IMG/VR virus record: IMGVR_UViG_3300027668_000008
Span: 186,001 to 250,000 of that record
Length of the DNA stretch: 64,000 nt
Strand: one strand, 5' to 3'
Part shown: piece by piece, positions 4,885 to 47,679 of the stretch
How the letters are laid out: each line of letters starts with the position of its first letter
Numbering within the stretch: the first letter of the stretch is position 1
Program-made: the position numbers and the translations under genes
Notes under the pieces: model-generated
The model's database searches: none
Told to the model about the DNA's origin: nothing
Seen by the model: only the letters and a program-made list of their open reading frames with translations

Positions 4885-5940
4885 TTACTTTAAAAGTTCT
4901 GGTTTATAGATTGATGGAAAGCCGTATGCTTCTTGATTCCACTTAACCGCATCTTTAAGAGCTTTTTCTGTAATCAAAGATTTCAGTGCCGCTAGTAATG
5001 ATGGACCGTCTTGGATCCAAGGATAAACACCAGTCTTAGCATAAATTTCTGCACTTGCAACTGGATCATTAATCATCTCAGTTACAGCCGCTTTAACTTT
5101 TGCCGCATTAGGGTTACCTTTGTTCATCCAAAGTGATTTTTGAATTGCATCACGCCAATTACGAGTAAGTTTATATGCTTGATATAATTCACCTGCTGGA
5201 CGTTCGCCCCATAAGTTCTCATACACATCTTCGAATTGTGTGTTTGGAAAGTTTGGATCTGCAATTTGTACATTGTTTTCTAAGTCTAGAATACCGTGTG
5301 TGAACCAAAGTTCGTTACCTTCGATACCTGTGTAAAAACGTTTCCATGCCGCCGGACTTTCACGTGCAATATCAAATTCGCCGTTTTTAAATCCAAGACG
5401 CTTTTCTCCGCCTGATACACCGTTAACCCAGATAACACGTTCTCTCCAACAAGCCAAGTATGCTTCGATTGAACCTTCTGGTTGTGGACCACATAGCAAC
5501 ATTGCCGCCGCCGCCGCATCTGGTTCAAAACCTGATCCGCCTGCGATTGTCCAAGTGCCGGATTTTTCATCCTTGCCTGCTTGTTTACCTAAAACGATAT
5601 CATTGTTCATTGAACCAATTAGTTCATAATCAAAGTAATCGTAATCTACTTTATCTAGTAGATATGATACACCGTTACCACCATGTGCTACCATAATCGT
5701 TTTGTCATCAAAACGTAGGTCATTGTGGAATTTGTTAAAGCCAGGAATATCACGTGCCCCTGGAATATGGCGTACCACTACTGGTTCACCGATAAACTTT
5801 TCCAAGTTTTTCGCAATAATCTCGCCCCATACAGAAGTACCTTTACCAGGTGCTTGTGGAACAATTAGTGTATAATCAGCGAATGCTGATGTGGCAATAC
5901 TCATCGAAAGTACTGCTGATATTAGTAGTTTTTTAAACAT
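4885..5940 (-). CDS. tctC: Tripartite tricarboxylate transporter substrate-binding protein (TctC/Bug-like)
   Basis: Signal peptide ending AFA, IVPQAPGKGT and VVVRHIPGA motifs; adjacent to tctA. Confidence 0.8.
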   Translation of the reverse strand: MFKKLLISAVLSMSIATSAFADYTLIVPQAPGKGTSVWGEIIAKNLEKFIGEPVVVRHIPGARDIPGFNKFHNDLRFDDKTIMVAHGGNGVSYLLDKVDYDYFDYELIGSMNNDIVLGKQAGKDEKSGTWTIAGGSGFEPDAAAAAMLLCGPQPEGSIEAYLACWRERVIWVNGVSGGEKRLGFKNGEFDIARESPAAWKRFYTGIEGNELWFTHGILDLENNVQIADPNFPNTQFEDVYENLWGERPAGELYQAYKLTRNWRDAIQKSLWMNKGNPNAAKVKAAVTEMINDPVASAEIYAKTGVYPWIQDGPSLLAALKSLITEKALKDAVKWNQEAYGFPSIYKPELLK

Positions 5941-45515: not shown

Positions 45516-45968
45516 TTAAGCGTCTTCTGTGAAGTCTGTATCGTCAGTACCTGCCGCAGTATCGTCGTCACCTGCTTCTTCAACTTGAACTTTTCCGTCC
45601 GATGCTGAAACAGTAGTATTCCAACCTATAGATGTGCCGTGCAATGCGTTAGATCCAGTAGCACTTGGTTGTGCTAGTGTCATTTTACGTCCTGCAATTT
45701 TAGATACACCATAAGTTTCACCATCATCGCCTTTTACAGAAATAATCATATCTGTTCCAGTTAATGCCGCTGGTAAAATACCAGTTTTTAGTGTACGAAT
45801 GTATGCAGTGCCAGGTGTTCCAGTTGCTTTAACTGAAAACTTTTTACTACCTAGTTGCTTTGCGATATATCCTTCAACAACGGCTGAACCGTCATGAAAG
45901 TTTACTTTAATTTCTTTGCCGCCTGCTGTAGGCACTCCGAAAAATCTTTTGTTAATTGGTCTTCCCAT
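45516..45968 (-). CDS. Hypothetical protein, likely an abundant virion or head decoration protein
   Basis: Monocistronic unit with late promoter (46042-46049), AGGAG RBS and terminator; MGRPINKRFFG start. Confidence 0.6.
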   Translation of the reverse strand: MGRPINKRFFGVPTAGGKEIKVNFHDGSAVVEGYIAKQLGSKKFSVKATGTPGTAYIRTLKTGILPAALTGTDMIISVKGDDGETYGVSKIAGRKMTLAQPSATGSNALHGTSIGWNTTVSASDGKVQVEEAGDDDTAAGTDDTDFTEDA

Positions 45969-46052
45969 TTTATTTCTCCTTGATACGTTTTATGTACTAC
46001 GAGGATGGCTCCCCATAAACTCACATTAGTGTGAGCAATACTATTTATATGT

Positions 46053-46244
46053 TTATTTGTTATGATGTTTAACTGATAAATGCTTGAGTATTTTACCTGC
46101 ATTTTCACCAGACTTAACAGTGTAGCCAGAGGTTCCTCCTGCATTAACATCTACTTCTGATCTGCTTTTTTGAAGTAATTTATCTATGCGGTTTTTCTCT
46201 GCCTGCTTACTATATGCTGTAAGCATATGTGTATGTCGGCCCAT
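46053..46244 (-). CDS. Small basic protein downstream of a glutamine riboswitch
   Basis: AAGGAGGG RBS; ATG at 46244. Confidence 0.7.
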   Translation of the reverse strand: MGRHTHMLTAYSKQAEKNRIDKLLQKSRSEVDVNAGGTSGYTVKSGENAGKILKHLSVKHHNK

Positions 46245-46269
46245 AATCACCCTCCTTATTAAAGTTAGG

Positions 46270-46315
46270 TGCGTTCCTTCGCTATTGCTACTTCCGGCCT
46301 CAAAGGCTGAACGTT
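46270..46315 (-). ncRNA. glnA-type glutamine riboswitch
   Basis: AACGTTCA-GCCT-TTG-AGGC-CGGAAGTA-GCAATAGC-GAAGGAACGCA matches the glnA motif: P1 CGTTC/GAACG with E-loop GGAAGTA...GAAG. Confidence 0.85.
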
Positions 46316-46322
46316 GTAAAAT

Positions 46323-46330
46323 TATTTAGT
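46323..46330 (-). promoter_or_regulatory. Late promoter (ACTAAATA) upstream of the riboswitch
   Basis: Motif match directly after the capsid terminator. Confidence 0.65.
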
Positions 46331-46352
46331 CATAATATCTGAGTTTTTACTC

Positions 46353-46380
46353 AAAAAGAAAGGCCCCGGAGGGCCTTTCT
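46353..46380 (-). terminator. Rho-independent terminator after the major capsid gene
   Basis: AGAAAGGCCC-TCCG-GGGCCTTTCT followed by TTTT. Confidence 0.9.
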
Positions 46381-46431
46381 AATATTGTTTCAGTTAGTTA
46401 ACAATAATATCCAAAAAGGATAATATGTATA

Positions 46432-47679
46432 TTAACTAAATGTTGGGTTAGCAATAGTTACTCTACCAACGTAATCCGCCGCGTTTCCAAGTGAACTTGC
46501 AGTTTGTGAAAGTTCGCTGTAACCGTAACGTGTCATAAAGCCAACTAATGGCTCTAATGTTGCTGGATCAAGTACTACACCTGAACTCATTAGTGGAACG
46601 TAAGGACAATAAAATGCCGCCGCGTCCGCTTCTGATGAACCTTTGTAACCAACTAATACCGCTTCTGAATCAGCCGCATAACTGTCAACATAGATTCTCA
46701 TTGCTGAGTTCAATGTACCAACGAATTTAGTATTTGTTGGTGCTTCAAAAGTACCTTCAGTTGTTCTTGCGAACGCTGAAGTAGATGCACTTTGTAGCAT
46801 AGTTAATGCAGTTGGAGAAACAACAGCCCAGTTACCTGCGCCACGTCTTGTTCTCTGTGCGATTTTGTTAGATACTCTGTTGATCGCCACAGCCAAAGCC
46901 GCGTGTTCGTCACCAACGTAAGTTGCTGTACCACTAACTGCCGCTTGGTCATATGCTTCAGTGTTTGCACCGAAAGCCGTTGAACCAGCCGCCGCTAAAG
47001 TTCTTAAAGAACTTAGAACTTCTTGGTCGATCTCTGCAGTAATCTCTTGGGCTAATGCCGCCATGATTTCTGCTTCTACATCAATACCTTGTTGTGATTG
47101 AGCGTCTTGAGCCGCTTCAAAAGTCCAACGAGCTGATAGTCTTCTAGTACGAGCTTCTACAGTTTGACGTAGAATTTCGATTGAAAGAGTATTACCTGGA
47201 ACACCTTCTAAGTATCCAGCCGCTGTTGTACCAGCCGCTTTTGCACCTGCCGCCGATTCAGTACCTGAATAACCAGCCGCGATGTCTTTTGGCCCTAGAG
47301 CCTCATCGTTAGCGGCTAGGTTAGTACCGTCATTAGTAGTTGCTTGAATTGCCGCACCGTTGGCACTATTAATAGTGTTTGCAGAGTTATATTTAACTCT
47401 TAAAGTGTGGATTTGTGCAATTGGACCAGTCATAGGTTGTACACCAACGATTTCATTTGCAATCACTGTTGGCATTACACGTCTAATTACGGGTAAAATT
47501 ACTTTGTTTAATTGTGCTACACCACCTGCCGCTGTCGCGCCACTAGTTGCCGCCTCTGAAAGGTGGCGTTTAGTATTTTCAAGTATTGTAGACATTGTCT
47601 TGCGACGAGTACCTTGTAAACCATCTAAAAGGGCTTCTTTAGTATTGTCCCAACGACCTTCTGCTAAAATATCAGACAT
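46432..47679 (-). CDS. gp23: Major capsid protein
   Basis: IVGVQPMTGP, RRLSARWTFEAAQD, EIDQE, FYCPYVPL and TRYG motifs. Confidence 0.98.
   Translation of the reverse strand: MSDILAEGRWDNTKEALLDGLQGTRRKTMSTILENTKRHLSEAATSGATAAGGVAQLNKVILPVIRRVMPTVIANEIVGVQPMTGPIAQIHTLRVKYNSANTINSANGAAIQATTNDGTNLAANDEALGPKDIAAGYSGTESAAGAKAAGTTAAGYLEGVPGNTLSIEILRQTVEARTRRLSARWTFEAAQDAQSQQGIDVEAEIMAALAQEITAEIDQEVLSSLRTLAAAGSTAFGANTEAYDQAAVSGTATYVGDEHAALAVAINRVSNKIAQRTRRGAGNWAVVSPTALTMLQSASTSAFARTTEGTFEAPTNTKFVGTLNSAMRIYVDSYAADSEAVLVGYKGSSEADAAAFYCPYVPLMSSGVVLDPATLEPLVGFMTRYGYSELSQTASSLGNAADYVGRVTIANPTFS

What the first reader, a model, noticed from the sequence alone, without database searches (positions are those of the whole stretch)
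46053..46380. Glutamine riboswitch-controlled late mini-gene right after the capsid gene
Seen: capsid terminator, then late promoter, a compact glnA-motif aptamer, a strong RBS and a 63-aa basic ORF. Known: glnA riboswitches bind L-glutamine and in cyanobacteria control the glutamine synthetase inactivator gifB. Inference: the phage senses host nitrogen status during nitrogen-costly virion synthesis and tunes a small effector, perhaps one acting on glutamine synthetase or on lysis timing.
Basis: partly seen in the sequence, partly recalled or inferred. Interest (0 to 1): 0.75.

Follow-up and report, generated by a model that had tools for sequence, protein, structure and literature searches.

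The report
Glutamine riboswitch gating a phage mini-gene
A giant marine phage carries, just after its capsid gene, a genuine glutamine-sensing RNA switch in front of a 63-residue protein, and the same small protein is a near-universal, unstudied gene of the ocean's most abundant bacteria (SAR11), so the phage seems to have put a host-type small protein under nitrogen-status control.

Summary
A capsid terminator (46380..46357) is followed by a late-promoter-like box ACTAAATA (46330..46323). Next comes a type-1 glutamine riboswitch aptamer (46315..46268; Rfam RF01739, 52.6 bits against a cut-off of 35, the only copy in the 307-kb genome). An AAGGAGG ribosome site and a 63-aa basic ORF (46244..46053) follow.

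The five bases after P1 (CACCU, starting with the 'linchpin' C) pair with the 3' end of the ribosome site. This helix covaries across 113 viral aptamers. It matches the translational ON-switch model proposed for cyanobacterial gifB.

The ORF is a real protein family (phrog_32989), and it is not DUF4278/IF17:
- Among the 78 closest viral homologues, 71 have the aptamer directly upstream.
- 100 of 141 SAR11 genomes carry one copy.
- Two of those genomes (an IMCC9063-type genome and one MAG) also place it behind a glutamine riboswitch.
- The other copies inspected have a different leader with no Rfam match: two tandem pseudoknots.

The protein's function is unknown, and a fold test against SAR11 glutamine synthetase gave no answer. 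Glutamine riboswitches in marine phages are already published. The effector family, its SAR11 origin and the alternative leader appear not to be.

The parts
46432..47679 (-). Major capsid gene (Gp23 type), context only
   Evidence: PF07068 E 4e-98 and phrog_138. Metatranscriptome contigs cover it at depth 17-30 and end at 46386-46445.
46357..46380 (-). Intrinsic terminator after the capsid gene (10-bp stem, then UUUUU at 46356..46352)
   Evidence: Terminator scan. Conserved in L004, L007, L009, L011, L053, L059 and L122.
46323..46330 (-). Late-promoter-like box ACTAAATA. The predicted transcript start is about A46317, 2 nt before the aptamer model begins.
   Evidence: Sequence. A TATAAATA or CTAAATA box stands at the same distance in 22 aligned cassettes. 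Perfect TATAAATA is enriched in intergenic DNA: 13 of 22 sites in 4.7% of the genome. The transcript start itself is inferred.
46268..46315 (-). Glutamine riboswitch aptamer, type 1 (glnA RNA). P1 is 46313-46309 with 46276-46272. P2 is 46307-46304 with 46300-46297. P3 is 46288-46287 with 46282-46281. The junction motifs CGGAAGUAG and GAAGGAACGC are intact.
   Evidence: RF01739, 52.6 bits, E 1.1e-8. In 101 viral aptamers, P2 positions 2-4 and P3 positions 1-2 are 100% paired and P3 position 3 is 95% paired, each with 2-5 pair types.
46267..46271 (-). Anti-Shine-Dalgarno arm CACCU. C46271 corresponds to the 'linchpin' C that pairs with a junction G when glutamine is bound.
   Evidence: MFE and constrained folds. 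Covariation with the 3' arm across 113 unique viral aptamers: 73.5% have 5 of 5 pairs, against 29% in a permuted control. The role of this C is taken from Ren 2015 as summarised in PMC6212724 and PMC11477058.
46248..46257 (-). Shine-Dalgarno AAGGAGG (46257..46251), overlapping the 3' arm GGGUG (46252..46248) of the sequestering hairpin
   Evidence: Sequence. The isolated hairpin has -8.2 kcal/mol. Mean unpaired probability of the SD is 0.30.
46053..46244 (-). 63-aa basic ORF (stop included), member of phrog_32989. Conserved motif: V..N..GTSGY..K.G.N.GK.L.H
   Evidence: phrog_32989 E 1.5e-10. 39 representative homologues. Alignment A2. 399 viral contigs and 115 genome contigs encode relatives.
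46042..46049 (-). Perfect TATAAATA box for the next gene (45516-45968, 150 aa), showing that this gene has its own late promoter
   Evidence: Motif scan. Metatranscriptome contigs of the downstream gene end at 46020-46087.

Best explanation
The stretch is a self-contained late expression cassette of a roughly 350-kb T4/Rak2-related marine phage. It runs: terminator, late-type promoter box, type-1 glutamine riboswitch, Shine-Dalgarno site, 63-aa gene.

Proposed mechanism. The transcript probably starts 0-3 nt before the aptamer. Without glutamine, the five bases that follow P1 (CACCU) pair with GGGUG at the 3' end of the ribosome site. An inner CUU/AAG pairing occludes the rest of the site, so translation is low. 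When glutamine binds, a junction G is inserted under P1 and pairs with C46271, the first base of that helix. The helix attached to P1 opens and the ribosome site is freed. This is a translational ON switch, so the protein is made only in infected cells whose glutamine pool is high.

The protein. It is a phage copy of a small basic protein family that SAR11 bacteria carry as a single, near-core gene. I think it most likely acts as a nitrogen-status effector. It would be analogous in role, not in sequence, to the glutamine-riboswitch-controlled GS inactivating factors of cyanobacteria.

Shown: the aptamer, the helix and its covariation, the family and its distribution, and the coupling of family and riboswitch. 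Inferred: the transcript start, the ON direction, glutamine binding itself, and the protein's function.
For: - Aptamer: RF01739, 52.6 bits (gathering 35), a single copy in the genome.
- Same cassette in near-identical relatives from several marine metagenomes.
- Same cassette at the same post-capsid position in relatives whose capsid is only about 70% identical (L011, L053, L059, L122). P2, P3 and the anti-SD helix differ there but stay paired.
- The anti-SD helix covaries: CACCU/GGGUG, CACUU/AAGUG, CAUCU/AGAUG. It has 5 of 5 pairs in 73.5% of 113 aptamers against 29% in the control.
- The helix begins at the base equivalent to C60/C68 of the published structural and gifB model. That model postulates that glutamine binding melts the RBS-pairing strand. 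Reporter fusions in that work show ON behaviour (PMC6212724; PMC11477058).
- A late-type box stands at a fixed distance in all 22 aligned cassettes, and TATAAATA is strongly intergenic in this genome.
- 71 of the 78 closest viral family members have an intact aptamer directly upstream, and at least 3 more have a decayed one.
- 22 of 123 sampled viral glutamine aptamers precede this family.
- The family is present in 100 of 141 Pelagibacteraceae genomes, nearly always as one copy.
- In 2 of those 141 genomes the copy sits behind a glutamine riboswitch. One of the two proteins is identical to WP_013695514.1 of strain IMCC9063.
- SAR11 lacks PII, GlnD and NtrBC (PMC3870248).
Against: - A nearest-neighbour model does not reproduce switching. 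The hairpin forms whether or not P1-P3 are enforced. Blocking C46271 costs only about 3 kcal/mol, so the switch must rest on tertiary effects that I cannot compute.
- No ligand binding or reporter data exist for this RNA.
- The promoter box is imperfect (6 of 8).
- In four marine metatranscriptomes, assembled contigs cover the capsid and the downstream gene. Of the cassette they cover only one low-depth piece (depth 2.1). Contigs show presence, not absence.
- The protein has no similarity to DUF4278, IF7 or IF17.
- Its predicted fold is one helix plus a poorly defined C-terminal half (pLDDT 76, pTM 0.36).
- The host of this phage is unknown. Its two-piece tmRNA is of the alphaproteobacterial type but only weakly like SAR11's.
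Confidence: 0.7

Rival explanations
1. The aptamer is real but works as an OFF switch or as a transcription attenuator: glutamine lowers expression of the ORF.
For: Direction cannot be computed. The secondary-structure model keeps the SD hairpin in both states. Low cassette coverage in metatranscriptomes would fit a mostly-off element.
Against: There is no terminator-like hairpin with a U-run between aptamer and ORF. The only conserved alternative pairing is the anti-SD helix, which starts at the linchpin C, a base the bound state uses. Both tested glutamine riboswitch types are ON switches (PMC6212724).
Confidence: 0.12
2. The small ORF is only a leader or regulatory peptide. The real regulated target is the downstream 150-aa structural-module gene, through read-through or translational coupling.
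For: No terminator was found after the ORF. One metatranscriptome contig (45999-46217) spans the ORF's 3' part and the start of the next intergenic region.
Against: The next gene has its own perfect TATAAATA box 81 nt upstream of its start. The ORF is a conserved protein family found in hundreds of viral contigs with unrelated neighbours, and in SAR11 chromosomes. There are 84 nt between the ORF's stop and the next start.
Confidence: 0.06
3. The protein is not a nitrogen-assimilation effector. It is a ribosome- or RNA-binding factor, made when glutamine signals that amino-acid supply is good.
For: The protein is strongly basic (net +7). In most of the SAR11 genomes examined the gene follows rbfA-rpsO-pnp and has an RNA leader that could be bound by its own product. 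Five of the top 30 fold matches are KOW-domain proteins (uL24, eL14, NusG-like, Spt5, RfaH), all non-significant at E>3.
Against: No Pfam KOW hit in any of 30 members. The fold model is weak. In IMCC9063-type genomes the gene lies elsewhere, next to a dehydrogenase/PNPOx fusion.
Confidence: 0.2
4. The protein tunes lysis timing.
For: Buchholz et al. speculated on a link between glutamine riboswitches and lysis in Melnitz (PMC9004378). In podophages HTVC019P and HTVC134P the homologue lies in the small-ORF region before the large terminase.
Against: The protein is hydrophilic, with no membrane-spanning stretch (sequence). The family is a chromosomal single-copy gene in SAR11. No lysis genes were identified beside it in the window.
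Confidence: 0.04

Closest known systems
Type-1 glutamine riboswitch of Synechocystis gifB (Klahn et al. 2018, PMC6212724; structure by Ren et al. 2015)
   Same: Same aptamer family (RF01739) and same conserved junction nucleotides. The C just 3' of P1 starts a short strand that pairs with the ribosome site. It controls a small basic protein and is a proposed translational ON switch.
   Different: The regulated protein is not DUF4278/IF17. The element is in a phage late module behind a T4-type box, not an NtcA-controlled promoter. P3 is only 2 bp. No experiment exists for this copy.
Glutamine riboswitches of Methylophilales phage Melnitz and Pelagibacter phage Mosig (Buchholz et al. 2022, PMC9004378)
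   Same: Marine T4-like phages of streamlined heterotrophs carrying RF01739 (52.8 and 50 bits). The anti-SD architecture is the same in Melnitz. These genomes also carry two-piece tmRNAs.
   Different: That paper reads the riboswitch as controlling ssrA. I find it followed at 26 nt by an unannotated 32-aa ORF in Melnitz, and by the 51-aa Mosig_00116 in Mosig. Neither is of the window's family. The window phage is a jumbo phage of another lineage, and its cassette follows the capsid gene.
Downstream-peptide / glutamine-II riboswitches with DUF4278 micro-ORFs in marine picocyanobacteria (Weinberg 2010, PMC2864571; Klahn 2018)
   Same: A glutamine-sensing leader in front of very short conserved ORFs. 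In viral contigs I also find type-1 aptamers before YRG-motif, DUF4278-like peptides.
   Different: The aptamer here is type 1, not type 2. The ORF family has no YRG motif and no profile similarity to DUF4278.
Glutamine riboswitches listed among the non-coding RNAs of T4-like cyanophages (PMC9602691, PMC9964418)
   Same: The presence of RF01739 in T4-like marine phages is already reported.
   Different: Those reports only list the element. They describe no regulated gene, platform or host homologue.

Membership tests
Glutamine riboswitch type 1 (glnA RNA, RF01739) | Covariance-model score above the curated gathering score | tested here: met
   52.6 bits against 35; E 1.1e-8 (window) and 1.2e-11 (genome)
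Glutamine riboswitch type 1 (glnA RNA, RF01739) | Three-helix junction P1/P2/P3 supported by compensatory change | tested here: met
   The window copy forms P1 (5 bp), P2 (4 bp) and P3 (2 bp). Across 101 viral aptamers, P2 positions 2-4 and P3 positions 1-2 are 100% paired and P3 position 3 is 95% paired, each with 2-5 pair types. P1 could not covary because it was part of the search pattern.
Glutamine riboswitch type 1 (glnA RNA, RF01739) | Conserved junction strands CGGAAGUAG and GAAGGAACGC, including the linchpin C after P1 | tested here: met
   Both are present without change at 46296..46288 and 46280..46271
Glutamine riboswitch type 1 (glnA RNA, RF01739) | Selective binding of L-glutamine | not testable with these tools
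   Needs in-line probing, ITC or NMR
Glutamine riboswitch type 1 (glnA RNA, RF01739) | Ligand-dependent release of a ribosome-site-pairing strand attached to P1 (ON switch) | tested here: inconclusive
   The strand and its covariation are present. Nearest-neighbour folding does not show switching. Direction is taken from PMC6212724.
Glutamine riboswitch type 2 (Downstream-peptide, RF01704) | Match to the RF01704 model | tested here: not met
   RF01739 was the only family reaching its threshold in the window
DUF4278 / IF17-like GS inactivating factors | Pfam PF14105 match and YRG motifs | tested here: not met
   No Pfam hit at E<=0.1 for the ORF, or at E<=10 for 30 family members. hhalign against DUF4278-like viral peptides gave probability 0.07%. 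The sequence has no YRG.
phrog_32989 (phage protein family of unknown function) | Profile match over the whole length | tested here: met
   E 1.5e-10, residues 3-54 on profile positions 2-54 of 54
T4-type late promoter | TATAAATA box about 6 nt before the transcript start, used with a phage late sigma factor | tested here: inconclusive
   The box here is ACTAAATA (6 of 8) at a conserved distance. Perfect boxes are 59% intergenic in a genome that is 4.7% intergenic. The transcript start and the late sigma genes were not examined.

The most novel reading that the evidence does not exclude
The roughly 64-aa GTSGY-motif family would be the missing glutamine-feedback effector of PII-less SAR11, functionally analogous to the cyanobacterial GS inactivating factors. 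Phages would have captured it together with a glutamine riboswitch. The tandem-pseudoknot leader that replaces the riboswitch in most SAR11 genomes would be a new riboswitch class sensing glutamine or a related nitrogen-status metabolite.
Probability: 0.15. Interest if true: 0.85.

Novelty: new variant of a known kind. Interest (0 to 1): 0.62.

Why it matters
Glutamine riboswitches are known in cyanobacteria and have been listed in some marine phages. What they control outside cyanobacteria is essentially undescribed.

Here the regulated gene is a conserved small protein shared by phages and by SAR11, the most abundant marine heterotrophs. SAR11 lacks the PII/GlnD/NtrBC system, and how it regulates nitrogen assimilation is an open question.

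One gene family sits behind a glutamine riboswitch in phages and in the cultured strain IMCC9063. In the other SAR11 genomes inspected it sits behind an uncharacterised tandem-pseudoknot leader. That gives two directly testable handles: a candidate nitrogen-status effector and a candidate new cis-regulatory RNA.

It also suggests that phages of streamlined bacteria time a late function by the host's glutamine pool. The published reading that the Melnitz riboswitch controls ssrA should be re-examined.

Tried and rejected
- Complex prediction of the IMCC9063-type small protein (residues 1-63) with two copies of the same genome's GlnA: verdict 'no answer', score 0.00, partner pLDDT 44-48. This is not evidence either way.
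- The protein-atlas search: no usable hit.
- Foldseek against AFDB clusters: only unnamed members of the same family were significant. KOW-domain proteins recur among non-significant hits.
- Pfam and NCBIfam: nothing for the ORF.
- PDB profile search: only repeat-protein artefacts ('Cake' designs). Long ankyrin and DUF11 hits in the representative search are likewise compositional.
- The search for related loci with the broad alignment A2 failed for lack of a conserved stretch. It worked with the narrower A5.
- tblastn of a typical family member (P0017) against isolated phage genomes: no match. The window ORF finds only weak hits in Pelagibacter podophages HTVC019P and HTVC134P and one fosmid. 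HTVC019P and HTVC134P have no glutamine aptamer.
- Thermodynamic modelling of the switch: not informative.
- Host assignment through the phage's two-piece tmRNA: it is of the alphaproteobacterial type (107 bits to RF01849). Identity to SAR11 is only 74-89% over 35-76 nt, in 11 of 61 genomes. This is not decisive.
- Search for further copies of the SAR11 leader with covariance model R1, hoping for a regulon: at most one hit per genome. Hits lie next to the family gene wherever that gene was detected.
- Family tree: too few columns to decide direction of transfer. The two riboswitch-linked SAR11 copies fall among viral riboswitch-linked copies with unstarred support.

Full report
WHAT IS THERE. 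The window is bases 186001-250000 of a 306,714-bp viral record, estimated 87% complete and 35.9% G+C. Its capsid is of the T4 Gp23 type. At the DNA level it is closest to the jumbo phages Vibrio phage 2.275.O, Yersinia phage fHe-Yen9-04, PA5oct, GAP32 and RaK2.

All genes around the finding are on the minus strand. Reading that strand, the order is:
- the capsid gene, ending at 46432;
- a 10-bp G+C-rich hairpin with a U-run at 46380..46357;
- the box ACTAAATA at 46330..46323;
- a 48-nt match to the Rfam glutamine riboswitch RF01739 at 46315..46268 (52.6 bits, gathering score 35, E 1.1e-8);
- the tail CACCU;
- an AAGGAGG ribosome site;
- ATG at 46244 and a 63-codon ORF ending at 46053.

It is the only Rfam family at gathering threshold in the window, and the only RF01739 match in the whole genome.

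THE APTAMER IS CONSERVED AND COVARIES. Near-identical phages from several marine metagenomes (Tara, Delaware Bay and others) keep the aptamer at 55-56 bits and differ only in the P2 loop.

In 101 distinct full aptamers from these loci, P2 positions 2-4 and P3 positions 1-2 are paired in 100% of sequences and P3 position 3 in 95%, each with two to five pair types. The window copy has P2 GCCU/AGGC and a 2-bp P3, and it fits.

More distant relatives of the window phage are L011, L053, L059 and L122. Their capsid is about 70% identical and their scaffold protein 40-47%. They carry the cassette at the same place, between the capsid gene and the homologue of the 150-aa downstream gene. Their P2, P3 and platform sequences differ but remain paired.

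EXPRESSION PLATFORM. The minimum-energy fold pairs the five bases after P1 (CACCU, 46271..46267) with GGGUG (46252..46248). An inner CUU/AAG pairing covers part of the ribosome site. The isolated hairpin has -8.2 kcal/mol.

Across 113 distinct viral aptamers, the 5-nt tail finds a perfect 5-bp partner just before the start codon in 73.5%. In a control that pairs each tail with the downstream region of a locus with a different tail, the figure is 29%. The partners change together: CACCU/GGGUG, CACUU/AAGUG or GAGUG, CAUCU/AGAUG, CGCCU/AGGUG.

The first base of this arm is the C immediately 3' of P1. According to the structural work summarised in PMC11477058 and PMC6212724, glutamine binding inserts a junction G under P1. 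That G forms a linchpin Watson-Crick pair with exactly this C, and a short helix attached to P1 melts. Klahn et al. proposed that in gifB this C and its neighbours pair with the ribosome site, and that glutamine frees the site. Their reporter fusions showed ON behaviour for both riboswitch types. The phage element has the same architecture, so a translational ON switch is the best reading.

This last step is inference. A nearest-neighbour model keeps the hairpin in both states and only loses about 3 kcal/mol when the C is made unavailable.

PROMOTER AND TRANSCRIPTS. In the genome, 13 of 22 perfect TATAAATA sites lie in the 4.7% of DNA that is intergenic. Twelve lie within 120 nt upstream of a same-strand gene start. 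This fits T4-type late promoters.

The cassette's own box is imperfect (ACTAAATA). However, a TATAAATA or CTAAATA box occupies the same position, 8-10 nt before the aptamer, in all 22 aligned cassettes from diverse contigs. It is also retained in variants where a 154-aa ORF is inserted upstream. A start about 6 nt downstream would put the 5' end 0-3 nt before the aptamer.

The next gene has its own perfect box at 46049..46042.

Four marine metatranscriptomes hold the region, but only as assembled contigs. Capsid contigs (depth 17-30) stop at 46386-46445, near the capsid stop and just before the terminator. Contigs of the downstream gene (depth 3-10) stop at 46020-46087. The cassette is represented by one low-depth contig (45999-46217, depth 2.1). 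This is compatible with a separately and weakly or conditionally expressed unit. Contigs cannot show absence, and DNA carry-over is not excluded.

THE ORF IS A REAL PROTEIN FAMILY. The ATG start is fixed by relatives in which the upstream GTG is out of frame. The product matches phrog_32989 (E 1.5e-10) and has no Pfam or NCBIfam match.

An exhaustive profile-free search found 39 representative clusters. Nearly all are 60-90 aa and share the motif V..N..GTSGY..K.G.N.GK.L.H.

The AlphaFold model has a confident N-terminal helix (residues 5-27) and a poorly ordered C-terminal half (pLDDT 76, pTM 0.36). Fold search returns only unnamed members of the same family as significant matches.

The family is not DUF4278/IF17. 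There is no Pfam hit in 30 members and no profile-profile similarity to DUF4278-like peptides.

COUPLING OF FAMILY AND RIBOSWITCH.
- Of 123 sampled viral aptamers with enough downstream sequence, 22 are followed at 25-29 nt by a member of this family.
- The others precede other micro-ORFs of 17-81 aa. These include YRG-motif, DUF4278-like peptides and several unnamed classes. Some arrangements are tandem aptamers.
- In the other direction, 399 viral contigs encode a family member. Among the 78 closest with enough upstream sequence, 71 have an intact aptamer directly upstream and at least three more a decayed one.
- One such contig (L062) is a Mosig-like pelagimyophage. L025 shows only short matches, to jumbo-phage and cyanophage genes.

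THE FAMILY IS A SAR11 GENE. A scan of one genome per prokaryotic species found 115 relatives. The best 80 are all Pelagibacterales, many on contigs of 100-430 kb.

In a sample of 141 Pelagibacteraceae genomes, 100 carry the family, nearly always once. In L205 the gene lies after rbfA-rpsO-pnp and before a trypsin-like protease, sodB and fabI.

RF01739 was found in only 2 of the 141 genomes. In both it lies directly upstream of that genome's single family copy. One of these proteins is identical to WP_013695514.1 of the cultured strain IMCC9063.

The other SAR11 copies inspected have a different conserved leader with no Rfam match at E<=1. It consists of two tandem hairpins, each followed by AAAAG and the complement of its own loop. 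On 22 distinct leaders:
- 95.3% of cells are paired;
- 9 of 18 pairs change on both sides;
- 0 of 500 shuffles reach this;
- slid controls give 24-34%.

A covariance model of this leader hits at most once per genome, beside the family gene wherever that gene was detected.

So one gene family sits behind two alternative structured leaders, one of which is a glutamine sensor. A tree of the 64 usable columns separates the main SAR11 clade from the riboswitch-linked copies. It cannot resolve the direction of transfer.

FUNCTION. Nothing here shows what the protein does. My preferred reading is a nitrogen-status effector, possibly acting on glutamine synthetase. It rests on regulatory analogy:
- in cyanobacteria, glutamine riboswitches overwhelmingly control GS inactivating factors;
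- SAR11 lacks the PII/GlnD/NtrBC system.

A rival reading is a ribosome- or RNA-binding role. It is suggested by the protein's charge, by its neighbours in most of the SAR11 genomes examined, and by recurring but non-significant KOW-domain fold hits. A complex prediction with SAR11 GlnA gave no verdict and is not evidence either way.

The host of the window phage is unknown. It encodes a two-piece tmRNA of the alphaproteobacterial type and a SAR11-type small protein. A roughly 350-kb phage in SAR11 cells would be surprising, and the tmRNA resembles SAR11's only weakly.

COMPARISON WITH WHAT IS KNOWN. RF01739 in marine phages is published, for T4-like cyanophages (PMC9602691, PMC9964418) and for Melnitz, Mosig and pelagimyophage MAGs (PMC9004378). 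The riboswitch itself is therefore a new member of a known kind.

In the searchable literature I found no description of the following:
- the regulated protein family;
- its SAR11 origin;
- the fixed late-promoter/aptamer/anti-SD cassette;
- its presence in a jumbo phage's structural module;
- the alternative SAR11 leader.

In Melnitz, the riboswitch annotated as part of ssrA is in fact followed at 26 nt by an unannotated 32-aa ORF with the same anti-SD helix. In Mosig it precedes the 51-aa Mosig_00116.

VERDICT. It is a new variant of a known kind. Interest is moderate to high, mainly because it points to a shared phage/SAR11 small protein under glutamine control and to a candidate new leader RNA.

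Noticed in passing
L205:2925-3000 (and L130-L209 generally): The SAR11 chromosomal homologues of the ORF carry a conserved leader of about 90 nt made of two tandem hairpin-plus-pseudoknot units. It has no Rfam match at E<=1. 95% of cells are paired, 9 of 18 pairs change on both sides, and 0 of 500 shuffles reach this. It occurs at most once per genome, beside the family gene wherever that gene was detected. It is a candidate new cis-regulatory RNA.
   Followed up: partly
L214:799-968 (Melnitz MZ577097.1 46398-46567); L211:1620-1845 (Mosig): The Melnitz glutamine riboswitch, annotated inside ssrA, is followed at 26 nt by an unannotated 32-aa ORF (MTLYQQWCY...) with a CACUU/GAGUG anti-SD helix. 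An opposite-strand CDS is annotated there instead. In Mosig the riboswitch precedes the 51-aa Mosig_00116. The published 'riboswitch controls ssrA' reading looks doubtful.
   Followed up: partly
L010-L129 (viral contigs): Viral glutamine aptamers precede at least six unrelated classes of basic micro-ORFs of 17-81 aa: DUF4278-like YRG peptides, M..WCF/Y.., MTLW..YCR.., ..RPR..KNI.S.DPRLQGI, MTKYQ...DNPFYP and others. Several loci have two aptamers in tandem.
   Followed up: partly
L005, L006, L008: 2446-2910: Some otherwise near-identical phage genomes have an extra 154-aa ORF inserted between the capsid gene and the cassette. It replaces the terminator region but keeps the promoter-like box. 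It has no Pfam match.
   Followed up: partly
G000:C1:150442-150775 (outside the window): The phage encodes a permuted two-piece tmRNA (tag ANNNYQPEMALAA; 112.7 bits to RF04321 and 107 bits to alpha_tmRNA) and 8 tRNAs.
   Followed up: partly
L205:3124-3237 and 5010-5083; L135:3161-3235: Right after the SAR11 small gene lies a stretch with sub-threshold similarity to the 3' part of alpha-tmRNA (37 bits, cut-off 50), with a second fragment about 1.9 kb away. It may be a terminator that resembles tmRNA, or old attachment-site duplicates.
   Followed up: no
P0013 (194 aa, from the representative search): One family member is predicted as a fusion, or a read-through, with an S-adenosylmethionine decarboxylase domain (PF02675).
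   Followed up: no
window 46262-46296 in runs X3 and X5: Metatranscriptome contigs match only the aptamer core. Their flanks belong to another cassette (loose ends read ...AAGGAGGGTG..ATGAC.GAT.A...). Related riboswitch cassettes are therefore present in these RNA libraries.
   Followed up: no
L144:2201-4206 and L216:1033-2944: In the two riboswitch-bearing SAR11 genomes, the cassette lies between a dehydrogenase/pyridoxamine-phosphate-oxidase-like gene and a 63-aa Cys-rich ORF. This is a different locus from the pnp-linked one of L205.
   Followed up: partly
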